Part shown: piece by piece, positions 3,264-51,272 of the stretch
How the letters are laid out: each line of letters starts with the position of its first letter
Position numbering within the stretch: position 1 is the stretch's first letter
Origin: Podarcis bocagei
Taxonomy: Eukaryota
Length of the DNA stretch: 64,000 nucleotides
Direction: 5' to 3' (one strand)
NCBI GenBank assembly: GCA_964188305.1
Contig: OZ076887.1
The notes under the pieces: generated by a model
What the model saw: only the letters and a program-made list of their open reading frames with translations
Database searches by the model: none
What the model was told of the DNA's origin: nothing
Position numbers and translations under genes: made by a program

Positions 3264-3409
3264 GCAAGGCAGTTTTCCTGTCATCAATCAGAGCGGCATT
3301 ATGGGATCCAGCTCTCCCTACACCCAGCCAATGAACAACAACTCAAGCCTGATGAACCCTCAAGCTCCTCCTTACAGCATGGCACCTAACATGGTGAACA
3401 GTTCCACAG
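3264..3409 (+). CDS. ARID1B: ARID1B coding exon (146 nt; [49 protein letters not shown])
   Basis: Acceptor cttcactcag (AG 3262-3263), donor CAG|gtaatg. Peptide matches recalled human ARID1[43 protein letters not shown]. Phase 2 to 1. Confidence 0.95.
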
Positions 3410-14845: not shown

Positions 14846-15521
14846 ACTTATGAAGTAAGCATCCAAATTGACCATAAGTCAACTGGTGCTTGTTCACATC
14901 TATGAAAGTACAAAGGAACCTGTTCCAGCACTGGTGGCACTGAAAATGCTCTCATGAAACCAAATCATCAGTTTCTATTATACTGCCCCTTTCCAGGTAG
15001 CTACAAACTCATCCTTGGGCCTGGATACTCTGGGGTGCTGTATTATTGCATAATAAGTATGCATTATATAGTGACTGCTAAAATGCTAGTAACCAAAGTA
15101 GCTTTTCATAATGAAAACATTTGTGCTTGAGAAAGTGACTTAAGAATCAAACATAGTTTGTTACTCCACAAATCCAAGAGGTGCCTAATGAAGTTGTCCG
15201 CAATTTTTCAGCATTACCATGGCAAGCATGTATGGTTTGGATTATATTGCTGTCAGTTATTAAAGTGAGTCACTCAATAATTAGATATTAAAATTAGACC
15301 TTAAAACTGTGTTTCAGGTTTGTAGAGTGATTATGTGGGTGTACTAATTTGGAGACATTTTCTCCTATTGCACATATAGCACTTAACTTGTGAGATCTAA
15401 AGGACTTTTCAGCCTCTGTAAAAGATGGAGTATTGATATATTCCAGTTTCTTGTATCATCAGTTTTCGACACACCGAGAAGTCAACCTTGATGCTAAATC
15501 GTACCTCCTGTTTTTGATTAG

Positions 15522-15628
15522 CCCCTATGGGTCTTGCAGATATGATGACTCCAGGCGAGTCCAAACTGCCCATCCCTCTCAAGCCAGATGGAAAAGAAGA
15601 TGGGCCTCCTCAGTTTGAGAGCAAAAAG
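15522..15628 (+). CDS. ARID1B: ARID1B coding exon (107 nt; [36 protein letters not shown])
   Basis: Acceptor tttttgattag, donor AAG|gtactt. Matches recalled human [37 protein letters not shown]. Phase 1 to 0. Missed by the ORF track in this frame. Confidence 0.93.
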
Positions 15629-16379: not shown

Positions 16380-16538
16380 GATAGCTACATCTCTCNNNNN
16401 NNNNNNNNNNNNNNNNNNNNNNNNNNNNNNNNNNNNNNNNNNNNNNNNNNNNNNNNNNNNNNNNNNNNNNNNNNNNNNNNNNNNNNNNNNNNNNNNNNNN
16501 NNNNNNNNNNNNNNNNNNNNNNNNNNNNNNNNNNNNNN
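16380..16538 (+). CDS. ARID1B: ARID1B cassette exon (DSY.SQ...), only the first 16 nt visible; remainder in N gap, end inferred
   Basis: Long polypyrimidine tract plus ccacag acceptor, then GAT AGC TAC ATC TCT C (DSYIS). Recalled human exon DSYSSQGISQPPTPG...PKTPSSP is 53 codons (159 nt) and would end inside the 164-N gap. Confidence 0.75.
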
Positions 16539-16559
16539 NNNNNNNNNNNNNNNNNNNNN
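16396..16559. other. Assembly gap (164 N)
   Basis: Run of N. Confidence 1.
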
Positions 16560-22912: not shown

Positions 22913-23122
22913 AAATCAAATTCGTCTACCACAACTGGAGAGAAGATCACAAAAATGTATGAGCTGGGAAACGAACCAGAGCGCCGAATGTGGGTGGATC
23001 GGTATCTCAACTTCATGGAAGAGAGGGGAACGCCTGTGGCCAGTCTACCTGCTGTAGGCAAGAAGCCACTAGATCTTTTCAGGCTGTATGTCTGTGTTAA
23101 GGAGATTGGAGGTTTAGCACAG
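22913..23122 (+). CDS. ARID1B: ARID1B coding exon (210 nt), ARID domain N-half ([32 protein letters not shown]...KEIGGLAQ)
   Basis: Acceptor ttttgctttag, donor CAG|gtaaga. ARID motif [24 protein letters not shown]. Phase 0 to 0. Confidence 0.98.
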
Positions 23123-24216
23123 GTAAGAAATTCTTATGTCTTGGTGTTCGTTGGCATCCATCTGTCTGGTGAAGTCAGACCGCTGTGTTAGCAGCACCCA
23201 GGTCTAAGAACCAGGGCTATTCTGGATTTATTAAGCATATGTGCGTAAGAATTTTCTTGGCTAGCATATAGATATTAGAAACTATAAATAATAATTATGT
23301 CTTTCCACTACAGCTATAGACGATACATCTCAGTATACCATTTCTGTGAAAAATGCACAAGTGTCTGTTTTGTCATATGCACCTGTGTTTCAGAGCAGTA
23401 TTGGAATTTAGTTTGCAAGAATTCACATGGTATACACTTCTTTCTCATCACAAGCACAGAAAAATGTCATTGTGCAGCTCTAAGACTTACAGGCTTTGAT
23501 ATCGTACGGCATAAAGCAAGATTCATTCTAGTCGGCCACCATATGTAAGGCTTTCAATAAGGAAACTCACTGAATCACCTTAGTATGTTCAAAATTGGTT
23601 ATAATTCATTTTGAATCTTGTTTGACTGTATATTTTGTTCTGCAAAGAGACCACAGATCTCCATCACAAGAAGCCCTGGCATTACAGCACCTGAATTAGG
23701 AATTACTAGCTAAATGATCCTTCAACTAGTGGCTATTTTAGAAGAGACACGGCCTTTCGTTTTTATTTTTTATATCAATGTCAAAGCACTTCAGCAGTGA
23801 AAAAAGGCTTTATTATTGCCATTTTAAATTAGTTTTTAGAAACTGTTGTTTATAATTGGAGTCTGCATGCTTGTTTGAGTGCCAGAGTGAACGAATAAGT
23901 ACATATTAGTTGGAAGATAGATTGGCTAACTGCACATTACAAGCCCCAGCCCTCCCCAAAGTGTAAAGAGTAGAGAAGGGATGCCTGGCAGAAGATACTG
24001 TGTTTTGTATAGCTATCAACAGGTTCTTTAATGGTTTTATAAGTGTAAATGCTGTTTGTGTGTTACAAATGAGTGTGGGAGTAATGAGCATTAGTTAAAA
24101 GAGGCAAATAAAACAAATAAACCAAGGCATTAAGTGCTGTGTTTTTTAAAATGTCTCCTGGCTTTCATCAGTCCACTTGGTTTCAATCCACTGATTTTGC
24201 TATTTATTTATGCTAG

Positions 24217-24555
<339 letters not shown>

Positions 24556-30826: not shown

Positions 30827-33132
30827 GCCTGCTTTGTCTTGAAGGGATAGACATTAGGAGCACAATATTCAATTAGCTTTGCTTGTTCCTGACAAACAGA
30901 ACCCAGAGTGTGGTGCAGGGACTTCTTCTCTTCCCCTTGGTTCTGAGATTCCACAGGGCTCCAATTGCCCAACCGGGGTGGGGGTGGGGATTTTTTTTTT
31001 TTTAAGCATTTGGAAAGATCCTAGTGTGTTGAGAGCAGCTAGGTGCATTTGTGCATGCACATCCATGCATGCACAGACAGCAGGAGGGGACGCATGAATG
31101 CTATATCCTGTAGAAATCAACTTGAGTTACACCAGATACTCCATTAATTGGGTTTGAAGGCCCTAGCCCCTCTCTGAGAGGGAAGTATGGGATTGCAGTA
31201 AGGGTACATTTTGGATGTGAGGTGGACGTCCTTTTCTGGAGTGTCACTATGGATTTTCCTGTCATTTCTGCATCGGCATTACTTCTGGTAGAGCCGGGGT
31301 TGAGAATGTTCCTCTGACTACCCATCCCTTTAAAAGCACTTGGTTCTGGTTATGGACTCTGTATCTTAATGGTTTAGAGTGGATAGGTGGGAAGTTGGGA
31401 GAAGGAAAGGCAGGGAGTTTAACAATTTGTAATTAAAACTGCCCCCCAGTGCTACTTTAAAAGTAATTTTTGGTTTTAAAAGTGTTGATTACATATTTTA
31501 ATGTCACAAAAAGTGGTAGTGGCGTATAGAGTAAGTTGCTTCGGATCAATGTGAGACAACCGACTTAACAAATATTAATACTAATACACCGATGACTTCC
31601 CTCAGTCTGCCTTAGCAATAATTCAGGGGTCATTGACTAACAAAGCTGTAGACCTGTTGTGCACCTGAGTTCCACCATGACCTCCAAGATCACTCTTTGA
31701 TGTATTAGTTCTGTGCAACAAATTAGAAACATAATGGGGGGAGCTCTAGTCCTCCTGATGCTCATCAAAACTTCTTCCACAGACCCTGTTGGACCTTGTT
31801 TATTTGGATAAGTCCCCACCCACCCACCCAAAAGAACCCCATCATCATCATCATCATCATCACAGTAAAGTTGTTGCCTGACCTGAACCTCTCCAGACTA
31901 GACATATTATCAGTAAAAAAATTAAGTATTGGAAAGCAATACTTCAAAATCCTTTGAAATACACTCAGGCCCTTAGAACTGGCTCTTCTGTTTCACAGTT
32001 GAGGCTCAAGCCTATGGCTTCCACTGCATGCCACATTTTGCAGCTGTTTATTATAGCTAGTAGTTTCAAAAACAACAACCAGCAGGTAGAAACCTAGCCT
32101 ACAAATTCACAGTTGGGTATCTTGTTTTCCTTTCTCTTTTTATGTCAGACATATTTATATGACTAGACACTGTGAGAGAGATCATTATTTTGCCCCCAAA
32201 ACAGAGTATATTCATGCCTCCTGTAAATGTTACAAGTATGTTCCACAAACAATTAGCTTTTGTTTCTTAGACTGAATTTAGTTAGAATTAAGGTACGGCT
32301 AAGCAAAATTGATGCTTAATGAGCTGAGGAAAGGTTGAAATATAGTGTGAGATGAGTATTTGATATTTTCTAGTCAATAGTTTATGAATTCTCAGCTTTT
32401 TTTTTTTTGGTTTTGCATTTGTTGAATCAGAAATAGCCATTGCTAATGGTTCCAGAATTTCAGGAAGCAGTAAATGGACAGGACAAACCCCAAAGATTCA
32501 AATAGCACCTATTTATAGAACTGATTTAGACACTATTATATTCATCTAAGGATAATTCTATAATCTCAAGATACCAGGAATCTGTCAGTTCCCATATTTA
32601 TAGGCTACTATAAAAGTAATTTGGGGTTCTACACATAATGAGGCATTAGGATCACTAGCTTTGCAGAAGGCATCTCATGTCTAAGCTTTATTAAAATGGG
32701 AACTTTTCTTCCACATGCGTCACTTGAGATGACATGGTCCTTGGAACAGTCATCTAATCAGAAGATTAGTTCTGCCTTTTTTGTTGGTGTCTGGGGTAGG
32801 ATGAGGGAGGATCAGCATTCTCTCAATTTAATTGTTTCTTGTGAGGCATCTAGTGATCCAGTGAGAGGATTAGACATAGGGAATGTGACCTATTATTTAG
32901 AGGTGTGTTCAACCACCATCCTGAATCCCAACCATCTTGGCTTAAGCAGTAGACTCATCTCTTAGATACACAAAAGACAGGAATTTAGTAACATAAAACA
33001 TCTCAGGCACCAGGTATATTCAGAGAAAACAAAATATTGATGGGCACTTGCTCTCTGTCTCCCCCTCTTGGTTTCATAGTTACTTATTTAACCAAATACC
33101 TAATATTTATTCTCCTGGTTTGAATCTTCCAG

Positions 33133-33271
33133 CAAATTCGGGTTCCCTTCAAGGTCCACAGACACCTCAGTCAACTGGTAGCAATTCCATGACTGAAGTA
33201 CCAGGTGACCTCAAGCCTCCAACACCAGCATCTACACCTCATGGACAAATGACACCACTGCAGGGCAACAG
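33133..33271 (+). CDS. ARID1B: ARID1B coding exon (139 nt; [47 protein letters not shown])
   Basis: Acceptor tcttccag, donor CAG|gtagta. Phase 1 to 2. Confidence 0.97.
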
Positions 33272-33323
33272 GTAGTATATTTTCTTTCCCCTTTCTTAGA
33301 GCCTGTCTGGACTTTGTGCTGTA

Positions 33324-33565
33324 CAGTGGTACCTTGGGTTAAGTACTTAATTCGTTCCGGAGGTCTGTTCTTAACCTGAAACTGTTCTTAACCTGAAGCA
33401 CCACTTTAGCTAATGGGGCCTCCTGCTGCTGCCGCGCCGCCGGAGCACGATTTCTGTTCTCATCCTGAAGCAAAGTTCTTAACCCGAGGTACTATTTTTG
33501 GGTTAGCGGAGTCTGTAACCTGAAGCGTATGTAACCTGAAGCATATGTAACCCGAGTTACCACTG
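33324..33565. mobile_element. Tigger-like MITE, 242 bp (same family as 57290-57531, opposite orientation)
   Basis: TA|CAGTGGTACCTTGGGTT ... AACCCGAGTTACCACTG. Internal AACCTGAAGC repeats. Confidence 0.88.
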
Positions 33566-33790
33566 TGTCATTCTTTCAGGAATGCTTTCTTGTGGCTCAA
33601 AATTCAATGTATTGTTGTTGTGGAAATCTCATTGGTATCTATGACATGATTGCATGCCATGGGAATCTAAACTCCATAATCCCTTGCCCCACCATGTTTG
33701 ATCCTGACCCCAGTGCCCAGCCATGAAAGAGGGTGCTATCATGAATTGCATGGACTCAGTGCAAAGTGGGAGGAAGCTTCTTATAATGGT

Positions 33791-33821
<31 letters not shown>

Positions 33822-34302
33822 ATTGAGTGTTCAGGCTTTGTCTTGAGATTTGCACTCATTGCTGAAGTCAAAATACAGAAGGTTTCTCCAGGCTCTGTCT
33901 TGAGACTAGCTAGTTTCATCTTACATGTGAGTTTGCAGGCTGAGTCTTTTACTCTGGAACTCATATCACTTGCATTGCTTCAGGACACTTATGAAAAGGT
34001 GTGTGTGTGTGTGTGTGTGTGTCCCGCTGCCACATTATTATTATTCTTGTTAAATTTCTGTAGCACCCATCATCTGAGGATCACAGGGCAGTTTACTATA
34101 TGAAAACACAAATGCCTAGAATGTTTTTGAAACTGGGTTTTGAAAGTGGGCTGTCAAAGTAAAATGGTAAAAGTGTAAAACCGATGGAGTTTTTTAGAGC
34201 AATTTAACTCACTGAACTACATGGCTCACCATCTAATAAGGTATCACAATGTGTGTTTCTGTTTCCATGACATTAATGCTTTCTTTTCCTCTGTCTCTTT
34301 AG

Positions 34303-34475
34303 AAATAGTTCCATTAGTGTGCATGATCCCTTTTCAGATGTAAGTGATTCGACATTCCCAAAGCGAAACTCCATGACCCCAAATGCACCTTATCAGCAGT
34401 CTATGAATATGCCAGATATGATGGGAAGAATGCCCTATGAACCGAATAAGGACCCTTTTGGTGGGATGAGAAAAG
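34303..34475 (+). CDS. ARID1B: ARID1B coding exon (173 nt; [57 protein letters not shown])
   Basis: Acceptor ctgtctctttag, donor AAG|gtatat. Phase 2 to 1. Confidence 0.97.
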
Positions 34476-34796
34476 GTATATTCTGTTTCCTAGCTACCTT
34501 ATGTGTACGTGTGTGTGAATTTAGGTGATTTGTTACCTTTGCATCCCAGAGATGTGAAGGGGGAAACCCTGTATGATACTGTTCTCACTGATCTCTGCTT
34601 TTTATTACATTTCATAAGCTATAGGTGCTCTTTCAGGGTTTGGTGTGGTTTAGACGGAAGGATATTTCTATAAAAGGGGAAAGGATTGTCAGCAAAGTTT
34701 TAAAAACGCACTGCTAGGTTACAGTCTACGCACATCTATTTGGGAGTAAACACCAATTAATTTCAGGTGCACACCTGTTTTCTTCTCTGCTTGCAG

Positions 34797-34947
34797 TGCC
34801 TGGAAACAGTGAACCCTTCATGACCCCTGGACAGATGCCCAACAGTGGAATGCAAGAAATGTACAACCAGACTTCCTCAGGGGCAATGTCCAATATGGGC
34901 ATGGGCCAGCGCCAGCAGTTTGCCTATGGAAGTGGTTATGACCGGAG
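34797..34947 (+). CDS. ARID1B: ARID1B coding exon (151 nt; [51 protein letters not shown])
   Basis: Acceptor ttctctgcttgcag, donor GAG|gtgagt. Phase 1 to 2. Matches recalled human [25 protein letters not shown]. Confidence 0.96.
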
Positions 34948-36219
34948 GTGAGTGACTCTGTCTTTTTTTATCCTCCCTTACAATGGCGTTCTATACTGAT
35001 GACTTCACACCATCTAGGCCAGGGATGGGAAACCCATGGACCTCCAGGTAATGTTGGACTATACCCAGTTGCAGCCCAAAAAACTTTTACAGGGCCACAA
35101 GCTCCCCATCTGTAATGTAGCAATCTCCTGAATCAATTAGAGTAAAATCATTAGTAAAAACTGAGTCTGTCCTCTCCCCCCCCCCCCCCCCCCTACAAGG
35201 AATCAGTAAGTGAGGGGTGTGGCTGCATAAGGAAATTTAGGTATGTTGTTGGGTATATTTGAATTCTTATTTGGAGTGGCGTTATCATAACTGAGCTGAA
35301 GTGTGTTTGCTCTTAATGAACATTTTAGCCCTGACAAACTGCACTCTACTCTTTTGGGTGATTTTGCAGACTCCTTTGCAAAAAGGTGTAAAAATGTTCA
35401 TGAGGAGGTGGGTGTCAGAAAGAGGGAGCAGGTCTCCATTGCCAAAGCATAGTTGACTAATGGGGCAAAAGGCCTGACTACATGTCCCGTTGAAAGTAAT
35501 CCAGTGTATATCCAAACTTCGATCTCTGCCATGTACACAGCACTACTTTCAGTAGGATGCATATCCTCATCTACATTCTGACCCAACAAGCTCAACTACA
35601 TGTAATTGGAATAAAAGTCTTACCTTGGCAGCCAGAGAAATGAACAGCAGAGCAAGACAGAGAGTGTCAGCATGGTTACTTGTGCAATCCCCTCCAGCTA
35701 TTTAGAGTCAGGTCAGTTGGAGAGCTTTCTTTGCCCTAAGTGATATCACCACGTAGCCAGGTCTGATTGTCTATATGATGGTGATTGCTTGGGATCAAGC
35801 ACAAAAGTCTTTTTAGGTAAAATCATCATCATCATCATCATAATTGCACTCAAATAGTTTGGGGAGGGGAACAATGGCTCGGCACAAATATGGCAAAATG
35901 CATGAAAGAATGGAAGGTACAGGGGTTTTTGCAAACCTTTTTTCTCTCTCTTCAAAATAGTGACATTTGCAGTGAATTTGGCACAGCACTAGTAAAACAA
36001 AAAACAAAGAAGCCCCTTTTTCTTCTTTTCAATAAAAACAAAGCATGCAGACTATGTTTTGCTCCATGTCCCAGTAATTTAGCTTCCTGCCGCTGTCTTT
36101 GAGAGGCACTGCTCCTGTAATGTGGTTATAACTATAATCCCATTGTCAATGGTTCAGTAGCTAGAATGGATTATTTCTTAATTATATTAATAAAGACTTT
36201 TGAAAAAGCTAGTAGTGGA

Positions 36220-36293
36220 GATTCCTTCATTGGATGGGGTTGGATTAGATGACCTTCAGGATCCCTCCCGATTCTATGATCTATGATTCTATT
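36220..36293 (+). mobile_element. CR1 LINE extreme 3' end with (ATTCTATG)-type tail
   Basis: GGGGTTGGATTAGATGACCTTCAGGATCCCTCCCGATTCTATGATCTATGATTCTA. A similar remnant lies at ~17325-17385. Confidence 0.75.
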
Positions 36294-36828
36294 ATAAGCT
36301 CTGGATACCAACAGAAAGGATCAGTGCAGAGGAAAATATATTTTACCGGTTAGAAGTGTTTTGTCCCACAACTTCACTAAAGAGCTAAATAACAAATTTG
36401 CCTATACACACACACACAATATTTAAAAAAAAACCAATGTGAATCTGCAACATGAAACTCTAATTACTAGAAATAATCTCTACCAAATATTCTCAAAACA
36501 TCCAGTGTTTGATGGCCAAACTAAAATTAAGCTAATTTCAGAACATCTTGAATTTTTTCAAACTAAGTTGTTTTGTGATTTTTTTTTACTGTTAGGAATA
36601 GAAGTCACAGAACTGTAAGTGGCATGTCATTTGTCCCTCCCCCTCCCAGTTATGTGTAGCTGTTTCCATGTTTCAGGTTTCAGTGGGCTGAATTTCATAA
36701 TCAAGAGCATCATAAAATAGGTGCCATACATTTATTCCTTGAAGAAATAAACTGCAGTGGTCCCAATGACACTTTGAGTCCCTGAGAGGTCTGGAGCCCA
36801 AACCGGCTATGCCTTAATTTTTTAATTA

Positions 36829-37087
36829 CTGTATTTTTTGCTCTATAAGACTCACTTTTTCCCTCCTAAAAAGTAAGGGGAAATGTGTGTGCGTCTTATG
36901 GAGCGAATGCAGGCTGCGCAGCTATCCCAGAAGCCAGAACAGCAAGAGGGATTGCTGCTTTCACTGCGCAGCGATCCCTCTTGCTGTTCTGGCTTCGGAG
37001 ATTCAGAATATTTTTTTTCTTGTTTTCCTCCTCCAAAAACTAGGTGCATCTTGTGGTCTGGTGCGTCTTATAGAGCGAAAAATACGG
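36829..37087 (+). mobile_element. CCGTA-ended Tc1/mariner-type MITE, 259 bp, with internal 29-bp hairpin
   Basis: TA|CTGTATTTTTTGCTCTATAAGAC ... GTCTTATAGAGCGAAAAATACGG|TA. TA TSD. Confidence 0.88.
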
Positions 37088-37156
37088 TATTTTTTTTTTA
37101 GCAGATTGAGAGAATAAGTGCTTTTTACAGCATGAGGTTTCCTTTGTCATTTTTAG

Positions 37157-37273
37157 GTCGGATCATGGGCTGGGTCCTGAAGGCAGTATGGGAGCACCTG
37201 GTCAAAGCAACATGGTGCCTTCAAACAGTGACCCAAGCATGTACTCTCCTAACCGTTACCCTGGGCAGCAAAG
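37157..37273 (+). CDS. ARID1B: Extra in-frame ARID1B exon (117 nt; [39 protein letters not shown]), ARID1A-like
   Basis: Acceptor ttcctttgtcatttttag, donor AAG|gtgaac. Symmetric phase 2 to 2, no stop. Resembles recalled ARID1A [40 protein letters not shown]. Confidence 0.88.
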
Positions 37274-40059
37274 GTGAACAACAATTTAATTTGTTTCAAA
37301 TGCCTGTGTTAATCAGATAATTTTAAATCTTGAGAGCCACTGGGCAGAAGGTGCAATTTACCAAGCATTGTTGCTGTGTAGCCTTTTTTCTTTTAATGGG
37401 ACTTCTGCTGTTCCCTGGCATCATCGACTCCTTTGAGAACAGTAGCAGTGGCTCAGCAGCCATGTCGATGGAGTGTTTCCAGAACTTACAGGAGCTTGAT
37501 GTCTGGCTTTTCATTATTTCAGTTTTGGATTATAACAGTATGTTCATTTTGAACTTCTAGAGAACATGGGATTGCAAAAGCCCTTCTACTTCCATAAATC
37601 AAAATAAAACTGTTATTTTGCTCATATATACACATGAAGTACTGTTCTTAACCTTTTACTTTAAATTTAGTCATTAAATGTTGAGGCTCCCATGTCTTTC
37701 TTTGGTTGCAACATTTTGTAAACAAATTAATTGAGATTCCTTGAAATATGGCTTATGTTTTTAAGTGGAACCCTCTAGGAGCTAGAATTCCAGCATATAT
37801 ATGCACAGACTTCTCTCACTTGCAGACATCAGCATGAACTGGGTCTACTCTCTAGGGTGAAAGCAGACCTTTGACTTTTCCCTTAAACCTCATTCTGTCA
37901 GACATTTTTAAAATCAAATTTTACAACTGTAACTCACTAAGAACATTTAAGAAGTGCTGCAGAGATATAAAAAACCATCATATATTTGTATAGCCAGTGG
38001 ATCCTCTATGAATATGACATCTATACATGCATCCAGTGCCATCACCATACATGGCACCTTACAGTTACATGGGCAAAATAGGCAAATCCCTACCTTCAAG
38101 GAGCTTAAAATAGACAATGGGAGGGAAGACCATAGAGGGGAGGGAGGAAAGACAAAGGGAGGGAGAAAATGATGCAAGCAAATGCAGTTCCATGTGCTTA
38201 AAGGTTGGGAATGAGGACTGAGGTTTGAGAAGGGATTTGAAAGAAGGGACAGAGGTAGCCCAGTGCAGTATACCTTGAACATAAAAGAAATATGTCACAG
38301 TAAGAGCACACAAGGTGGCTTATTCCAGCCTTACCAAGGAGGCATCCTTGGTTTATCAGGTAAAGAAGCTTATTTTTCTTAGGTCTGAGTATTAATATTC
38401 TAGTTGCTAATTATTGCCTATTTTAGATTTGTGTCTGTATGGTTATGCCACTGTAAGGGGCTCCATAGCAAATTAAATACCTTAGGTCATATTGTTTGTT
38501 TATATTAATACATTTCGAGGACAATTTACAAATTTTAAATAGCAAAATAACAAGTTGTCACCTGGCATGGGATTGATATCAAATTTGGTGCTGTGTGAGC
38601 TAACTTAGAAAAAGTATTCCACAGGCAGGGTCCCCTGGGAAGTATTCCATGAAGTATTTCCATCAATTCAAAGACTCGCTGCCCTGTTCCCCCCCCACAC
38701 ACCCTAAATCTGTTTTGGGAGTTCCTCCAATTCTCTGTAGCAGATTTGGGAAGGGCATAGGGGGGTCCATGGCATCACTGCACTAACTGACCAATTGCAA
38801 GAGCAATCCTAGATGTTTATTTGCTGGATAAATGAGTCTTAAGGTTGTGCTTTTAATCTGAGACGAGATGGTTTGGATGTTATATTATAGCAAATTACGT
38901 TATATCCAGTTTGGGGTCTCCCGTCAAAATTAGATACAGTACTCTGCACTGTTACCAAGTTGCAAAGGTAAGTTTCCAGGTGTGCCTACAGCTCTTGAGT
39001 TCTCAACATAATATGTAATAAACATAATCATGCTTACATGAAGTTCTCACAATGCATGCATTCACATGTAACTCTAACCCAGGGTAGTTCAAGTCCCACC
39101 AGCCTCAGCAAGCATAGCCAATGATCAGGGATGATGGGAGTTGTAATCCATAACATCTGGGGTACATCATGCTGGCTACTCCTGTACTAAACCATAATTT
39201 AGTGCTAAGTTGATGAACCTCATGAAGCTCAAGCAAAGCATCAGGCTTACACACTCCCCAATCTTCCTGTGCAACAAGGAGGACTTTTGCCAAGCTTAAT
39301 TTCACTTCCAAAGAAAATTGGTTTAACTTTATGTATTCCAGTTCAATTATAAATTTTCCTTAAACTTCTGAATAAAATATTTCTCCTGTTTACATAAATA
39401 ATTTTATAAAAGTGTAATATTCTAACATTATTGGCTAACCATAGATTTCATCATCACTGTGTGACTCAACGCAGAATCAACTTCAGCCTCTTAGTTGGAT
39501 TTGTTTTCACTGTAGGATGGGCACATAATTTTGACTTCAAAGCTTTCAGCTCATTCAGATATTTGCAAGTGAGGTGAAGTGGAAGCTTGGATATTGGAAT
39601 TATATGTCCCCAGCACTCTAAACAGGAAGTTGCACATGACCCTGGGATACCAGTAATTCACTCAGTTGCTACAGTACTTCCATCTCTCATAAGAGATTAA
39701 AGGAAAGCAGAAAACTTGTGAATCAGGCATACATCCATGTCATATGTTGCCTCCTACCTGCAGCAGTAGGTATGTTCAATTCTCAGATCCAAGCCTACAC
39801 AACTACTTCTACATTTTTTATAAGACTGAAATAAATGTACTCTGATACAGTGCCACTGAACCAAACTGAACTGCAGCCCAAGCACACACCCCCATGAACA
39901 AAACTTCTGTTTTAACAAATAACATTTTGTTGTTGACAGGCGGTATGATGGAACAGAAGGGAGGTTCTGTGGAGAGCTTCAGGACTTCTTATAAACAGCT
40001 CTCCGTTTATAATTGGGAAATTGTCTGTACTAATTAGTAGCTCACATTCCTCATTGCAG

Positions 40060-40156
40060 GCATGAACAATATGGGCCGCAATATCCAGTGCAAGTACCTC
40101 CTTCAGGACAGCCACCCTATGGGGGACACCAACCTGGAATGTTTCCACAACAGCAG
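40060..40156 (+). CDS. ARID1B: ARID1B coding exon (97 nt; [32 protein letters not shown])
   Basis: Acceptor ttcctcattgcag, donor CAG|gtaaac. Phase 2 to 0. Matches recalled human [31 protein letters not shown]. Confidence 0.96.
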
Positions 40157-40502
40157 GTAAACATTTGTGGTTGTCATTTTCCCTCCGCAAAGTTCATTCT
40201 AGAAATCCATGCATACGGACATTGAAAAACAGAATGCAACATTAGGATGAATTCCACAGAAAAGACATTGCCAGGCCTATGACTGCATGTGTGTGGATCC
40301 TTTTGTATGAAATGTTTCATAGTTGTGAATAGCTGATTCAGTGACACACGGGACAAGGTGGGTTTGGTGTTGTTGTTTTTTACTGAGGGAGATTTGATGC
40401 CAGTGCATAGACAATGTACAAAGACAAAGGACATATCCCCAATAATGTTGGTAGGGGGAGGAGGGCTGTTTCTATGTTATCTTCATGCACTTCAGATAGC
40501 TA

Positions 40503-41398
40503 CCGTATTTTCCCCTCTATAACACGCAGATTTTTTCTCCTAAAAAGGAAGGGGAAATGTCTGTGCGTGTTATTGAGCGAATGTGTGGTCCCTGGAGCCG
40601 AAAAATCAGGCAAAAATAAAATTGCGCGTCACGGAGAAGGGAAACCTGAAAAGAGGAAGTTGCTGCTTTCCTGCATTCTTCCTCAGGGTCTTACTGCCCA
40701 CCCCCTTGTGTTTCGTTGCTGTGTTTACTCAAACGGAACAAAGAGCAGGCAAATCCCCTCCCCTCCAGGCAAGCAGAGGGGAAAGCAGAGCGTCCTTCCT
40801 TCTAATTCCTCTCCGTGCTCCGGTGCTGCTGCTGCTGCTGCTGCTCGCAGGCAGCCAGAAAACATGCAGATGGGAGAGAGAGGGGGGGCTGGCTTGGGGG
40901 GGGAAACTTTTGCCTTTCTTTCCTCCCTCCCGTTAAATCCCTCTCCTGCATTCTTAGCCAGCTGCTTCTCTGCACACCCCTCTCGTGCTCCTTGTCCCTT
41001 CTGTGTTTTTCCTTACCTCCCCACTTAAAATGTAGTTACAAAGCATGGATCCACATGGATCTTCAGGATCTTTGCATTGGGTCACCCCAAATTCACCATC
41101 AGATCACATAGTATGTCCATGGCTACAGCCTGCACCAAAAAAATCACGCACCCACTGTTGCCTGGGGCCGCAATGGTGCAAAAACGTGGTTACAAAGCAC
41201 AGATCCACAGGGATTCTCAGGATGTTTGCATTGGGTCACCCCAAATTCACCATCAGATCACATGTCTGTGGCCACAGCATGAAGCACAAAAATGATACAT
41301 CCACTGTTTCATTCAGAATTCCCCCCCCCCTTATTTTCCTCCTCTAAAAACGATGTGCGTGTTATGGTCAGGTGCGTGTTATAGAGCGAAAAATACGG
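40503..41398 (+). mobile_element. CCGTA-ended Tc1/mariner-type non-autonomous element, 896 bp
   Basis: TA|CCGTATTTTCCCCTCTATAACACGCA ... TGCGTGTTATAGAGCGAAAAATACGG|TA. Arms shared with 36829-37087. The interior has a (CTG)n tract and a ~154-bp-period internal duplication. Confidence 0.88.
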
Positions 41399-42662
41399 TA
41401 AATCCAGTGGGAAAGGAGGCAAGAAGAAAAACCCCACCTCTGTTGAAACATGAAGGCTAGCAAGAGAATGAAGGGGCCAAGTGAATATTTACAAATTGCA
41501 AAGTTGTTTGTCTTAAAACTATCCAAAAGATAGGGCAGAAAAGTTATAGCTGAGGCTGCCATTGCCACACAACAGCCAAGTTCCAAGTTAATTTGTTGGA
41601 TAATGTTTATATCCCATTTCCCAGTAAAACTCTCAAAGCAGCTTTCTAGTGGGAACTGCAGCTGTAGCATTCCTTTATCCAGGGCCGCAGCAGCCAGCCA
41701 ACCTTTATTTCATTCTGTTCTTCCTCTCTCCCAGTTAACAATGTCCCCGCCCCCCTCCACACACAGAAAAAAATGGATTCTTAAGTCCTACTGATTCTTT
41801 TGTCTTGTACACAGATGATACTCTTTTGGCTACATAAGGACTGTCACCCAGAGATTGGCTTGCTCTGAGCATACAAACATCATACCTATATATATATCTT
41901 TCTGAAAATATCCTTAAATATATCTCAATACAAAACAGTAACCAAGAATCATAGGATTTAATCCAATGCTGCTGTTCCAAAAGTGGAAATGTATTCCAGA
42001 AGGTTAGGGGACTCTCAGGGCAGTTTTGGGGGTGTCTGGGGAATGCAGGGGGAGGAGAGGAGGGGGAAGTTAGACTGTGCTCGATACAACCCATAGCCAA
42101 CACAACACAGAGCATCCAATTACTCCCTTACTCCCTTCACTTAGAGGCAAAAGTCTCCTAAAAAGCTTAGTCTGCTGTTTTCCTATATGAGAAAATCGGG
42201 ATGGTTCTAACCACCTCCCCCTGAACATCTGGTGGTGGTAGCACCTTCAAGAGGGCCTCTGACATTCTAAAAGCATGTGGGGAAAGTTCTCTCTGTTTTA
42301 TTTTAGTGTTTGTTGAAGACATCTTGCATCCCAGGTGCTTTTACTCATGTGATACATTCATACCATTTTATATGCTTTATTGTGTCTCGTTTTCTGAAAA
42401 GAAAGTTATAGCGAGCTTCAAAATTATAGAGACTATCAGTTTTATGTATCTTAAACAAAAGTCTTAAAAATGACCTTACTAATAAAGAAACATTGTTTTT
42501 TCAAACTTGGATATGTCAAAAAATAACCAATAACTTTTTTACCACGCTTCACTGGAATGAGAACTAACATGAGTTGTATTAGCCTTAGGCTAACTATCTT
42601 TTAAACATAAAGTTATAAACACATCAGAACTACCTCCGAAAATGAAAGGGCTGTCTCATATA

Positions 42663-42797
42663 TCACGCCGGGATCCGGAGGGTGGCGCAGAGCTGCAGGA
42701 AGCCCGGGAAAGCCTGCATTCGCCCCATAGGACACACACACATTTCCCCTTCATTTTTGGAGGGGAAAAAGTGCGTCCTATAGGGCGGAAAATACGG
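42663..42797 (-). mobile_element. Truncated CCGTA-ended MITE (single arm, inverted orientation)
   Basis: Reverse complement of 42711-42797 aligns ungapped to 36829-36915 (73/87 identical by manual count). Ends AATACGG|TA. Confidence 0.8.
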
Positions 42798-42887
42798 TAA
42801 AAAGGCATTATATGTTAATGAAAACACTAATCAAAGTATGTTATATTTTTACCAAAATCTGTATAATGTAGCCTCAAATGCTTCTGC

Positions 42888-43180: not shown

Positions 43181-43262
43181 GGCTGTGGAATATGAATCTT
43201 CCTATGAAAAATAATATTTTCATTGTATTTTAAAGCTTATTCATGTTGTTCCTCCTTTTCAG

Positions 43263-44049
43263 AACTACAAACGGCATATGGATGGCATGTATGGGCCCCC
43301 AGCAAAACGCCATGAAGGAGATATGTTTAATATGCAGTATAGTGGCCAGCAGCAAGATATGTTTAACCAGTACAGTGCTTACTCTGGACCAGACCGAAGG
43401 CCCATACAGGGACAGTATCCATATCCTTATAGCCGAGAGAGAATGCAGGCACCGGGACAAATGCAGCAACATGGAATACCTCCTCAGATGATTGGTGGTC
43501 CTATGCAGTCATCAGCCTCCAGTGAAGGCCCCCAACAGAACATGTGGCCCACAAGAAATGATATGTCTTACCCATATCAAAATAGGCAAGGCCCTGGAGG
43601 CCCTGCACAGGCCCCACCTTATCCAGGGATGAACCGCACTGAAGATATGATGGTCCCTGACCAGAGGATAAACCATGAAAGCCAGTGGCCTTCTCATGTC
43701 AACCAACGTCAGCCTTCTTACATGTCATCTTCTGCCTCCATGCAGCCTGTCACTCGACCTCCTCAGTCATCTTACCAGACGACGCCGTCGATGCCAAACC
43801 ACATCTCTCGAGCGCCTAGTCCTGCATCCTTCCCACGCTCCCATGAAAACCGTATGTCTCCAAGTAAATCCCCTTTCCTGCCCTCCATGAAGATGCCGAA
43901 AGTTATGCCCACTGTTCCAGTCTCACAGGTCGCAGGTCCTCCAACCCAGCCACCACCAATTAGGAGGGAAATAACTTTTCCTCCAGGCTCTGTAGAAGCA
44001 TCCCAGCCAGTCTTGAAACCAAGACGAAAGATTACCTCAAAAGATATAG
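43263..44049 (+). CDS. ARID1B: ARID1B large coding exon (787 nt; [20 protein letters not shown]...[28 protein letters not shown])
   Basis: Acceptor cctccttttcag, donor TAG|gtaagt. ORF 43278-44060. Phase 0 to 1. Confidence 0.98.
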
Positions 44050-45192
44050 GTAAGTGCTAGACAATGAAAAGGAGTCTCTTTTTAATTACAATATTTTAAA
44101 GGCTGCAGTTTTGTAAACTTACGTTGAGAAATTACCTTTGTTAAATTGCAACTATGCCCAAATTTCATAGCAGGAGTGACCATTTTCACCCCACCACTTA
44201 ATCTACTTATATGAAGAAGGGCACTGCATACTTAGGCAAGAAGTTACTGTAACTGTGTGTTTTATTAAAGTTTTCATATTAGGTGTTGTCCTCCTGCTGT
44301 TTCTGACATTTGGTTTCTTCCTGAAATAAGCAGGATTTATGTGATTTCATTTTGGCACGGGGGAGCTAGAATCCAACGACTAATGAAGGGGACACCGTTT
44401 TGGTTACTTCTGGATCATTTGGTTACTTCTATGGCCATTTTTCACCCCCTCTTCCCCAAGAGGAAATTCAAAGTATACTTTGGAGAACCAAAGTATACTT
44501 TGCTTACTTACAAGAATGCATTTTGAGTAGACATTATGAGGGCTCAGAAGATAACATATGATTATGCAGAAAAAAGTATCAGTAGAGCACTCAAAAAATC
44601 CAAGCTGGGTCTGAGAACTGCAAGATTAAATCTGATTTTCCTCAAATCCTAACAGTTCTTCAAAAGTGGTTTCAATCTGCACCCAGAACTGGGTGTGACA
44701 TACACAAACACGCACCCTTGTGTACATTCCTTAGTTAGCTTGAAAGAAAGGATAGCCAAAAGCCTTATTAATCAAACATATTTTGTTCCTCTCAACTCCT
44801 AATGCTTAAGAGTGGCTCATCTCTTCAATTTGCATAACGGAGCATGATAGCTAACGACCATGTTTGTTAGCCACAGATTAACCTTCTGTGCTGTTTTATT
44901 CAGCCAGTTCTCAAAATAGCAACATGGCTTTTTTCATCTTAAATAGGCAGTTTTTCCTGCTGTATTTAATATAATTCAGTGTTGTGTTCAGTGGAAGACA
45001 TGCTAGTGAATTCTGCATATGAGAGTTGCCATTCCTGAACCTAACAAAGGAACTGTGACTATTCATACCATAATCTGGAATAAAAGCATCCCTTCTTCTC
45101 ACTGATCCAAAATCTGTATGCCATTTGAAATCTAGCTTCTGGATCTCCTTTAGACAGAATGCTTATTAATGCTTTGTGTTCTTATTTTCCAG

Positions 45193-45323
45193 TGACTCCT
45201 GAGGCTTGGAGGGTGATGATGTCACTTAAATCAGGCCTTCTTGCTGAAAGTACCTGGGCTTTAGATACTATTAATATCCTTCTGTATGATGACAGTACTG
45301 TTGCTACTTTCAATCTCTCTCAG
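45193..45323 (+). CDS. ARID1B: ARID1B coding exon (131 nt; [44 protein letters not shown])
   Basis: Acceptor ttattttccag, donor CAG|gtaggt. Phase 1 to 0. Identical to the recalled human peptide. Confidence 0.98.
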
Positions 45324-45376
45324 GTAGGTTTGATATTTCTCCAGAAGTCTGTTTATCTGAAACCTCCTAATGCCAT

Positions 45377-47363: not shown

Positions 47364-48129
47364 TATTCAGTATCTATTTCTCCATCTAAGTTCCTTCACA
47401 TGGTTAGTGTGTGGATAAATTTAGATGGGGACATGCTGTAGCCTGTCCAGAGACTTTGTGGGATAACGTGGGTGGGGGAGAGTGGGAGGTCTGGTTTCAA
47501 TAAATGCATGTCTTTGCAATAATTTCAGCAAAATAGAAATTCATGAATTTTAAGAAGCAAATGGCCATGGCAAAGTGGCCTCACTCACCCTGACTTCAAA
47601 TGTACTCTCCTTGTACTCCTGTATTTAGCACCATTCCAGTAAGAAAACATTACAAGGACACAGTGTAAGTGGAGTTGTATCTATAGGTTCTCTTCCTCTG
47701 AGGGCAGAGGGAAGACCCTTTATTCCAGAGGAACACTCAGTTTGTGTGCCTGTGTGTGTTTAAATAATTGTGACTATTTTGTAAGATCCAAAAAGTTCAA
47801 TTGTGGGATAAAATAAAAAATAAAACAATAAGTAATAAAAACTTTTAATATTAAATTAAATATTAAATACAGTTTGGGGATTTCCTTTAAAATGTGCGAA
47901 CTACAAGGGTTATAAATACTTTATATTTTTATTACTCCATTAAATCTTTTTAGTATTCCCAGATCACTAAATGCCTACATTTAGAGAATGCCCCAACAAG
48001 GTTTGTTTTATGTGTAAAATGAAGAGTAAATTAACATCTTTCTGAAAGTATGCCTACTGCTGCCAACACAATTCTGTTTCACCTGAAATGTTCCTCTTAA
48101 CGTTCTTATGTTATTTTTTGTTTCTTCAG

Positions 48130-49854
48130 TTATCTGGTTTTCTTGAGCTTTTGGTGGAATACTTTAGAAAATGCCTGATAGATATATTTGGAATCCTCAT
48201 GGAATATGAAGTCGGACATCCAGGACCAAAAATACTTGACCATAATTCAGCCCAGAAAGAGGATGCCCAGTCTGCAACGCAAGAAGCCAGCAAAGAAGAA
48301 AACAATGATGAATGTATTGATTATTTTGGTGAATTTGAGGATGAGGAAGAGGAAGAAGAGGAAAATGAGAACCCTGAAGAAGAGAAGAGCACTGTTCTTG
48401 CTCCCCCTGGTGCCATTGCTGATCCAAGTGAGAGGCCAAAACAAGCCAGTAAGTTTGACAAGCTGCCAATAAAAATCGTAAAGAAAAACAACTTATTTGT
48501 TGTCGACCGATCTGACCAGCTGGGGCGTGTTCAGGAATTCAACAGTGGACTCCTCCATTGGCAGCTGGGTGGGGGTGATACAACCGAACACATCCAGACC
48601 CACTTTGAGAGTAAGATGGAGATTCCTCCTCGCAGGAAACCGCCTCTTCCATCCAACTCTTCAAGTAAAAAGAGAAATGTGGAGGGGAAAAGAGAACCTG
48701 AGGAACAGCAAGACAAAAGCATATCAGCCACCATTGATGATGTCTTGTCAGCTCGTCCAGGAGCACTGTCTGAAGACTCAGACTCTAGTTCTCAGACAGA
48801 TAGCAGTAAATTTCCATTTGGGATCCACCAAGCCAAAAGTCATCGGAATATCAAGTTGCTAGAGGATGAGCCACGGAGTCGAGATGAGACTCCTCTATGC
48901 ACCATAACTCACTGGCAGGACTCTCTGGCCAAACGTTGCATCTGTGTGTCAAACATTGTCCGCAGCTTGTCTTTTGTGCCTGGCAATGATGCTGAAATGT
49001 CAAAACATCCGGGCTTGGTGCTAATCTTAGGAAAGTTGATACTTCTCCATCATGAACACCCAGAAAGAAAGCGTGCACCACAGACATATGAAAAAGAGGA
49101 AGAGGCGGACAAAGGGGTGGCCTGCAGCAAGGATGAGTGGTGGTGGGACTGCCTTGAGGTCTTGAGGGATAATACATTGGTCACATTAGCCAACATTTCT
49201 GGGCAGCTAGACTTATCTGCTTACACGGAAAGCATCTGTTTGCCAATTTTGGATGGCTTACTGCACTGGATGGTGTGCCCATCTGCAGAGGCACAGGATC
49301 CTTTTCCAACTGTGGGGCCCAACTCAGTCCTGTCGCCTCAGAGACTTGTACTGGAAACCCTGTGTAAACTCAGTATCCAAGACAATAATGTGGACCTTAT
49401 CTTGGCCACTCCCCCATTCAGTCGTCAGGAGAAACTCTATGCTACTTTAGTTAGGTACGTTGGGGACCGCAAAAATCCAGTCTGCCGAGAAATGTCCATG
49501 GCACTCTTATCGAACCTTGCCCAGGGGGACACATTAGCAGCAAGGGCGATTGCTGTGCAGAAGGGAAGCATCGGAAACTTGATAAGCTTCCTTGAGGATG
49601 GGGTCACTATGGCCCAGTACCAGCAGAGCCAGCATAACCTCATGCACATGCAGCCCCCGCCTCTGGAGCCACCTAGCGTAGACATGATGTGCAGGGCAGC
49701 CAAGGCTTTGCTGGCCATGGCCCGGGTGGAGGAGAATCGCTCAGAGTTCCTATTGCACGAAGGACGTTTGCTGGATATCTCAATATCTGCTGTCCTGAAC
49801 TCTCTGGTTGCATCTGTCATCTGTGATGTACTTTTTCAGATTGGGCAGTTATGA
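48130..49854 (+). CDS. ARID1B: ARID1B terminal coding exon (1725 nt incl. TGA); BAF250_C / armadillo-like core-binding region ending ...[12 protein letters not shown]
   Basis: Acceptor ttttgtttcttcag in frame with ORF 48088-49854. Sequence and C-terminus (FQIGQL) match ARID1B rather than ARID1A. Confidence 0.99.
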
Positions 49855-51106: not shown

Positions 51107-51272
51107 NNNNNNNNNNNNNNNNNNNNNNNNNNNNNNNNNNNNNNNNNNNNNNNNNNNNNNNNNNNNNNNNNNNNNNNNNNNNNNNNNNNNNNNNNNNNNN
51201 NNNNNNNNNNNNNNNNNNNNNNNNNNNNNNNNNNNNNNNNNNNNNNNNNNNNNNNNNNNNNNNNNNNNNNNN
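51107..51272. other. Assembly gap (166 N)
   Basis: Run of N. Confidence 1.

What the first reader, a model, noticed from the sequence alone, without database searches (positions are those of the whole stretch)
37157..37273. ARID1B retains a 117-nt 'ARID1A-type' exon apparently missing from human ARID1B
Seen in sequence: between the exons ending ...YDRR (34947) and starting HEQYG (40060) lies a stop-free, frame-preserving (phase 2 to 2, 39 codons) exon with good acceptor and donor, encoding [39 protein letters not shown]. Recalled knowledge: human ARID1B reads ...GASYDRR|HEPYGQ... with no such insert, while human ARID1A has [40 protein letters not shown]..R at the same position. Inference: the exon predates the ARID1A/ARID1B duplication, is kept in this reptile (possibly as a skippable cassette) and was lost or silenced in mammalian ARID1B. 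That would change the Tyr/Pro/Gln-rich disordered region of the BAF scaffold in a lineage-specific way.
Basis: partly seen in the sequence, partly recalled or inferred. Interest (0 to 1): 0.72.

Follow-up and report, generated by a model that had tools for sequence, protein, structure and literature searches.

The report
Old ARID1B optional exon, already annotated
The flagged 117-base stretch is a real, optional coding exon of the lizard chromatin-remodelling gene ARID1B. It is ordinary: nearly all jawed vertebrates and the egg-laying echidna carry it in public gene models, and only marsupial and placental models lack it.

Summary
Observation confirmed. Window 37157-37273 (+) is a stop-free 117-nt exon (AG before, GT after, phase 2 to 2). 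It lies between the ARID1B exons 34797-34947 and 40060-40158.

The window is a lacertid ARID1B locus, 99-100% identical to Podarcis raffonei isoform X1. RefSeq models of Zootoca, Podarcis and Varanus already contain this exact exon, paired with isoforms that differ only by these 39 residues. It is therefore an annotated cassette exon, not a reptile peculiarity.

ARID1B models of sharks, a chimaera, gar, bowfin, coelacanth, lungfish, amphibians, turtles, squamates, birds and the echidna also carry it. An mRNA-type salamander contig contains it.

In ARID1A the matching segment directly follows the match to the upstream exon, so an origin before the ARID1A/ARID1B duplication is supported.

None of 43 labelled non-human marsupial or placental ARID1B sequences has it, and a paper comparing three human reference transcripts reports no such exon. 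The absence is therefore therian, not mammalian. I could not test whether therian genomes keep a relic.

About 60-70 nt of upstream intron and the synonymous sites are unusually conserved, and the donor site is weak. This fits a regulated exon. Its function, lengthening the disordered linker after the ARID domain, is inferred.

The parts
37157..37273 (+). 117-nt in-frame cassette exon of ARID1B (39 codons counting the two split Arg codons)
   Evidence: open frame with AG/GT borders; 100% identical to residues 1490-1529 of Zootoca X1 (P0201) and 1499-1538 of Podarcis raffonei X1 (P0209); isoform pairs in seven species differ only by this exon.
37087..37156 (+). Conserved upstream intronic block (about 60-70 nt) holding the pyrimidine tract and a likely branch point; probable splicing control region
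   Evidence: (alignment A1): the 60 nt before the exon are 83-89% identical between the lacertid, a rattlesnake and a song sparrow, against about 38% for the next 60 nt; blastn against the avian contig L005 runs from 37087 to 37280 at 90.8%.
37274..37280 (+). 5' splice site gtgaac, suboptimal at positions +5 and +6, kept as gtgaa(c/t) in the four sauropsid sequences printed (window, L001, L002, L004)
34797..34947 (+). Upstream constitutive ARID1B exon, ending in the YDRR motif
   Evidence: It matches ARID1A chain 6ltj_L residues 252-297, directly before the ARID1A match of the cassette.
40060..40158 (+). Downstream constitutive ARID1B exon, starting with the HEQYG motif
22913..23134 (+). ARID-domain exon (approximate borders from tblastn); shows the cassette lies C-terminal to the DNA-binding domain
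   Evidence: Pfam PF01388 ARID, E = 6e-12.
48115..49851 (+). Last coding exon, holding the BAF250_C core-binding domain
   Evidence: 99.3% identical to P0209 over 579 residues. PF12031 BAF250_C, E = 2e-130.

Best explanation
The stretch is a genuine, evolutionarily old alternative (cassette) exon of ARID1B, the large scaffold subunit of the canonical BAF chromatin remodeller. Included, it adds 39 residues to the disordered linker between the ARID DNA-binding domain and the C-terminal BAF250_C core-binding domain. These residues are rich in Ser, Gly and Pro and include two Tyr, three Met and one Ser-Pro site. Skipped, the reading frame is unchanged. Inclusion is probably regulated through a weak, conserved donor site, a conserved block of about 60-70 nt in the upstream intron, and constrained synonymous sites inside the exon. 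The exon existed before ARID1A and ARID1B separated. ARID1B models of all sampled jawed-vertebrate groups outside Theria, and of the echidna, contain it, but no marsupial or placental ARID1B model examined does. Shown here: the anatomy, the homology, the annotated plus/minus isoforms, the presence in one mRNA-type contig, and the conservation pattern. Inferred: that it is regulated, and that its role is to tune the length and the sticky-residue or phosphorylation content of the linker, making it more like that of ARID1A.
For: Anatomy. Gene identity: tblastn of Podarcis and Zootoca ARID1B gives 98-100% identity on the major exons, and the window's own exons hit Pfam ARID and BAF250_C. Cassette status: removing the 39 residues makes the long isoform identical to a shorter annotated one in Zootoca, Podarcis raffonei, Varanus, Liasis, Struthio, Athene and Tachyglossus. 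Transcript evidence: contig L008 carries an uninterrupted 1655-codon ORF that includes the exon, and L009 is an avian-type uninterrupted ORF without it. Breadth: 69 of 69 hits to the exon region are ARID1B of birds, turtles, squamates, amphibians, coelacanth, lungfish, gar and arowana. Sharks, rays, a chimaera, bowfin and echidna are added. Paralogy: ARID1A chain 6ltj_L matches the upstream exon at 252-297 and the cassette at 301-338. Regulation signature: upstream intron 83-89% identical across squamates and birds. Synonymous changes are rarer than in the two flanking exons: 2/37 against 14/67 codons, and 3/32 against 18/67, one-sided Fisher p = 0.03 and 0.04. The donor gtgaa(c/t) is conserved.
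Against: I had no RNA-seq from this lizard, so inclusion and skipping in this species rest on RefSeq models of close relatives, whose read support I could not see. The Fisher tests use few codons and the species pairs are not independent. No splicing-factor motif is conserved in the upstream block; the GCATG in the window is absent from the other species. The functional reading is an analogy with published work on ARID1A disordered regions (PMC12476982, PMC12819386), not a test. The downstream exon gave no ARID1A match, so colinearity is shown on one side only.
Confidence: 0.9

Rival explanations
1. The exon is constitutive in lizards, and the exon-less isoforms in public annotation are model artefacts, so it is not a regulated cassette.
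For: I saw no read-level support for the skipped isoforms in squamates. All lacertid evidence comes from predicted XP_ or CAI models.
Against: Plus/minus pairs occur in seven species, named in several different styles (XP_ 'isoform X' and 'isoform N-T'). An avian-type intron-less contig lacks the exon (L009), while many bird models include it. The weak conserved donor and the conserved intron block are typical of alternative exons.
Confidence: 0.07
2. Marsupials and placentals did not lose the exon. It persists in the orthologous intron and is used rarely or in few tissues, so gene models miss it.
For: Absence was tested only in annotated proteins, not in therian genomic DNA. The exon is optional elsewhere, so low inclusion could hide it.
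Against: 0 of 43 labelled non-human therian sequences from 24 species carry it, whereas models of birds, turtles, squamates and amphibians often do. In echidna the exon has changed more than its flanks (7/39 against 9/83 residues versus the turtle form). In squamates the reverse holds (1/39 against 14/83). This suggests relaxed constraint on at least the monotreme lineage.
Confidence: 0.1
3. It is a chance open frame or a pseudo-exon with no coding role.
For: None beyond its short length and low-complexity composition.
Against: It is 100% identical to annotated exons of three lizard genera. It is kept at 39-40 codons, and at the same position in the protein, in models from sharks to birds. AG/GT borders were checked in the DNA of five species, from bowfin to birds. 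It is present in an mRNA-type contig.
Confidence: 0.01

Closest known systems
RefSeq ARID1B isoform X1 of Podarcis raffonei (XP_053238215.1) and Zootoca vivipara (XP_034964550.2), with their exon-less partners X4 (XP_053238219.1) and X3 (XP_034964552.2)
   Same: The same gene and the same exon, with identical 39 residues and identical flanking residues. The partners differ only by the exon.
   Different: Nothing of substance. The window is the genomic locus of this already modelled exon, in the same lizard family.
ARID1A linker segment (PDB 6ltj chain L, residues 301-338)
   Same: A paralogous segment in the same position, directly after the match to the upstream exon (252-297) and sharing the MYSP..RYP core.
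   Different: It belongs to a different gene and is one to two residues longer. From my own knowledge, not tested here, it is present in the main ARID1A isoforms rather than optional.
Known human ARID1B in-frame alternative exons: the 39-bp exon 3 of NM_020732.3 and the 159-bp exon 11 of MANE NM_001374828.1 (PMC8393241)
   Same: The same kind of feature: small in-frame exons included in some ARID1B reference transcripts and not in others.
   Different: They differ in position and sequence. The paper compares three reference transcripts (NM_020732.3, NM_017519.2, NM_001374828.1) and reports no 117-nt exon between the YDRR and HEPYG exons. The 53 residues of the lizard protein whose length equals the 159-bp exon have no match in the window and may lie under the N run 16396-16559, which I left alone.

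Membership tests
ARID1B (BAF250b) gene | Encodes an ARID DNA-binding domain | tested here: met
   window:22913-23134:+ hits Pfam PF01388, E = 6e-12.
ARID1B (BAF250b) gene | Encodes the C-terminal BAF250_C core-binding domain | tested here: met
   window:48115-49851:+ hits PF12031 over the full profile, E = 2e-130.
ARID1B (BAF250b) gene | Orthology to ARID1B rather than ARID1A | tested here: met
   The major exons are 98-100% identical to Podarcis and Zootoca ARID1B. All 69 named hits to the exon region are ARID1B. ARID1A matches only at E = 7e-5 to 7e-6.
Conserved alternative cassette exon | Length a multiple of three, no stop, canonical AG/GT, frame kept on inclusion and on skipping | tested here: met
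Conserved alternative cassette exon | Both inclusion and skipping isoforms exist | tested here: met
   Annotated pairs are identical after removal of the 39 residues in seven species, including two lacertids. Intron-less contigs exist with the exon (L008) and without it (L009), in other taxa.
Conserved alternative cassette exon | Both junction types seen in RNA of this species, with tissue pattern | not testable with these tools
   No RNA-seq of the window's species was available.
Conserved alternative cassette exon | Raised conservation of flanking intron and of synonymous sites relative to neighbouring constitutive exons | tested here: met
   Upstream 60 nt are 83-89% identical against about 38% further out. 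Third-position identity is 92-95% against 69-78% in the flanking exons. Fisher p = 0.03 and 0.04, on small samples.
Exon shared by the ARID1A/ARID1B paralogue pair (older than the duplication) | Homologous segment at the colinear position in ARID1A | tested here: met
   6ltj_L residues 252-297 match the upstream exon and 301-338 match the cassette. The downstream exon gave no match.
Exon shared by the ARID1A/ARID1B paralogue pair (older than the duplication) | Same exon borders in the ARID1A gene | tested here: inconclusive
   Unlabelled fish ORF fragments with ARID1A-type residues begin and end at the same positions (P0010-P0014).

The most novel reading that the evidence does not exclude
Marsupial and placental genomes, human included, still hold a functional copy of this exon in the orthologous ARID1B intron. 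It would be used rarely or in few cell types and is missing from gene models, so variants in it are invisible to Coffin-Siris and intellectual-disability diagnostics.
Probability: 0.08. Interest if true: 0.55.

Novelty: already known. Interest (0 to 1): 0.2.

Why it matters
For this lizard it matters little. The exon and its optional use are already in public gene models of the same family.

The residual point of interest is comparative. A cassette exon that has been kept nearly unchanged since before sharks and bony vertebrates split, and that makes the ARID1B linker resemble ARID1A, is absent from every marsupial and placental ARID1B model I could examine. It is present but faster-evolving in a monotreme. 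If this is a true loss, the disordered linker of the BAF scaffold differs systematically between therians and other vertebrates. That would bear on transferring results about ARID1A/ARID1B disordered regions and condensates from mouse and human to chicken, frog or fish models. I found no paper describing this.

Tried and rejected
1. Literature. Four searches found nothing on a 117-nt ARID1B exon (ARID1B with alternative exon; RefSeq accession numbers; cassette exon or 117 bp; pseudoexon or intron 16). Only PMC8393241 was useful for the human transcript differences. PMC13542418 and PMC12909702 did not bear on the exon.

2. First protein search. It used only the 46-residue exon region of a newt protein and missed echidna and sharks, because too few exact words were shared. 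A 191-residue region including the flanks found them.

3. Therian genomic DNA. One look-up of a marsupial isoform found no record. I judged the other therian gene models too long to return DNA (over 100 kb) and did not try them. The orthologous therian intron therefore remains unexamined.

4. P0155 (stork) was not on record.

5. Splicing-factor motifs. I looked for a conserved motif in the upstream block. The GCATG in the window is not conserved.

6. Other features at the site. There is no Rfam family in 34000-41000, no competing ORF of note on either strand, and no Pfam family for the exon peptide.

I repeated the step using stored protein ids only. A Pfam call failed because a tblastn-derived interval ran into an intron, and I dropped that interval.

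8. Steps left out. I built no joined, spliced model; all window searches were exon by exon, by reference.

9. Possible human material. P0323, labelled Homo sapiens, was left out of the junction scan. The unlabelled transcript-type proteins P0268, P0276 and P0297 carry the therian flank signature and could be human, so their contigs were not fetched. No contig I took for human was fetched.

10. P0001. This unlabelled ORF fragment, seen on 98 contigs, was fetched only after the evidence made a therian origin unlikely. Its contig L005 aligns to the song-sparrow locus over 6086 of 6350 nt, so it is avian.

Full report
**What is at the coordinates.**
- An AG at 37155-37156 follows a long pyrimidine tract.
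- The open 117-nt stretch 37157-37273 begins with the base that completes an Arg codon started at 34946-34947.
- It ends with two bases that are completed to Arg by the first base of the exon at 40060.
- The donor is AAG|gtgaac.
- Inclusion and skipping both keep the frame.
- The 38 whole codons are window:37158-37271:+.

**What gene and which animal.** I ran tblastn of annotated lizard ARID1B proteins against the window. It lays out twelve exons: about 3265-3408, 15521-15628, 22913-23134, 24196-24420, 33099-33272, 34301-34474, 34797-34947, 37157-37273, 40060-40158, 43251-44048, 45192-45326 and 48115-49851.
- The major exons are 98-100% identical to Podarcis raffonei isoform X1 (P0209) and slightly less to Zootoca vivipara X1 (P0201).
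- The residues flanking the exon are identical to those of lacertids and differ from Varanus, snakes, Rhineura and Salvator.
- The window is therefore the 3' two-thirds of ARID1B of a lacertid lizard.
- The window's own exons hit Pfam ARID (E = 6e-12) and BAF250_C (E = 2e-130).
- The 117-nt exon lies between the two, in the disordered linker.

**It is already annotated, and as an optional exon.**
- The 39 residues are identical in RefSeq models of Zootoca (X1, X4, X5), Podarcis raffonei X1, Podarcis lilfordi X5 and Varanus komodoensis.
- Removing the 39 residues from the long isoform gives exactly a shorter annotated isoform in Zootoca, Podarcis raffonei, Varanus, Liasis, Struthio, Athene and Tachyglossus.
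- An intron-less 6.7-kb contig (L008) has an uninterrupted 1655-codon ORF that clusters with newt ARID1B and contains the exon, so the exon is spliced into mRNA in a salamander-type animal.
- An intron-less avian-type contig (L009) lacks it.
- I had no RNA data for the lizard itself.

**How old and how widespread.**
- A search with the exon region of a newt ARID1B returned 69 proteins. All were ARID1B of birds, turtles, squamates, frogs, salamanders, caecilians, coelacanth, lungfish, gar or arowana.
- A second search used a 191-residue region spanning the flanks. It added sharks, rays, a chimaera record, bowfin and the echidna.
- The exon is 39 codons nearly everywhere and 40 in sharks, gar and bowfin.
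- In PDB chain 6ltj_L (ARID1A) the upstream exon matches residues 252-297 (E = 7e-6) and the cassette matches 301-338 (E = 7e-5).
- The segment therefore sits at the same place in the paralogue, which supports an origin before the ARID1A/ARID1B duplication.
- The downstream exon has no detectable ARID1A match.

**Mammals.**
- Echidna isoforms X1 and X2 include the exon, and X3-X5 skip it.
- Every labelled non-human marsupial or placental sequence I could examine joins YDRR directly to HEPYG or HEAYG: 0 of 43 sequences from 4 marsupial and 20 placental species.
- In the flank-inclusive search, any therian protein bearing the exon would have ranked among the listed rows. About 94 exon-bearing proteins were listed, and none was therian.
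- The 40 sampled members of the largest exon-bearing cluster (725 members) were birds and turtles only.
- For human I used only the literature. PMC8393241 states that NM_020732.3, NM_017519.2 and the MANE transcript NM_001374828.1 differ by an N-terminal extension, a 39-bp exon 3 and a 159-bp exon 11. No 117-nt exon is mentioned.
- The absence is thus therian rather than mammalian, and it is shown for gene models, not for genomes.
- In echidna the exon has diverged more than its flanks (7/39 against 9/83 residues relative to the turtle form). In lacertids and Varanus it has diverged much less than the flanks (1/39 against 14/83). This fits relaxed constraint on at least the monotreme lineage. 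A song sparrow shows a similar relaxation (5/39 against 4/83).

**Signs of regulation.** I fetched genomic loci of a rattlesnake (L001), a song sparrow (L002), a bowfin (L003), an unlabelled sauropsid (L004) and an unlabelled bird (L005).
- In alignment A1 the 60 nt upstream of the exon are 83-89% identical between the lacertid and the snake or sparrow. The next 60 nt are about 38% identical.
- Against L005 the match runs from 37087 to 37280 at 90.8%. The flanking exons match at 83-86%, with only 9-27 nt of upstream intron included.
- Third-codon positions are 92-95% identical in the cassette against 69-78% in the two neighbouring exons.
- Codons with a synonymous change are fewer: 2/37 against 14/67, and 3/32 against 18/67, one-sided Fisher p = 0.03 and 0.04.
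- The donor gtgaa(c/t) departs from the consensus at +5 and +6 and is kept in the four sauropsid sequences printed.
- Together these are the usual marks of a regulated alternative exon.
- No known splicing-factor motif is conserved in the block.

**Likely function (inferred).** The exon adds 39 residues: 7 Ser, 6 Gly, 6 Pro, 3 Asn, 3 Met, 3 Gln, 2 Tyr and one Ser-Pro site.
- It has no Pfam family.
- It lies in the region that corresponds to ARID1A IDR2, the disordered stretch between the ARID domain and the core-binding region (PMC12476982).
- The abstract of PMC12819386 attributes ARID1A condensate formation to evenly spaced tyrosines in its disordered core.
- The most economical reading is that inclusion lengthens the linker and adds sticky and phosphorylatable residues, making ARID1B more ARID1A-like. 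Nothing here tests that.

**Handling notes.**
- P0323, labelled Homo sapiens, was left out of the scan. Three unlabelled transcript-type proteins with the therian signature (P0268, P0276, P0297) could be human, and their contigs were not fetched.
- The N runs at 16396-16559 and 51107-51272 were left alone.
- P0001 is an unlabelled ORF fragment seen on 98 contigs. Its contig L005 aligns to the sparrow locus over 6086 of 6350 nt, so it is avian.

**Verdict.** The exon is a real, ancient, optional ARID1B exon. It is already in public models for this lizard family and for most vertebrates, so it is not a reptile-specific retention. The only modestly new point is its apparent absence from therian ARID1B, which still needs a genome-level check.

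Noticed in passing
window 16396-16559 (N run): Residues 1145-1197 of Zootoca ARID1B X1 (P0201) have no match anywhere in the window, between the exons at 15521-15628 and 22913-23134. These 53 residues are the same length as the 159-bp in-frame exon 11 of the human MANE transcript. The 164-base N run is the only obvious place for them. I did not try to fill it.
   Followed up: no
window 36824-37092: A 269-bp palindromic element lies just upstream of the conserved intron block. It has 32-nt terminal inverted repeats (88% complementary) and an inner 35-nt hairpin. Partial copies lie at 40501-40583, 41330-41400 and 42711-42800. It looks like a MITE- or SINE-type repeat family.
   Followed up: partly
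proteins P0058, P0061, P0070, P0073, P0074, P0079, P0080, P0100 (bird ARID1B, partial models): Older bird gene models carry 10-17 extra residues between the cassette exon and the next exon. These are probably donor-site or mini-exon mispredictions rather than biology.
   Followed up: no
protein P0163 (Nothoprocta pentlandii, tinamou): At the cassette position this model has a strongly diverged 30-residue segment instead of the conserved 39. It could be a decaying exon in tinamous or a model error.
   Followed up: no
proteins P0118, P0119 (Pristiophorus japonicus isoforms X5, X3): These sawshark isoforms have about a dozen extra residues between the YDRR motif and the cassette exon. This suggests a further alternative splice site or micro-exon in that lineage.
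   Followed up: no
locus L005 (unlabelled avian contig, 6350 nt): Five ARID1B exons that span about 7 kb in the lizard (33120-40159) fit within about 5.7 kb in this bird. The introns align to the song sparrow at 70-79% identity along nearly the whole contig.
   Followed up: partly
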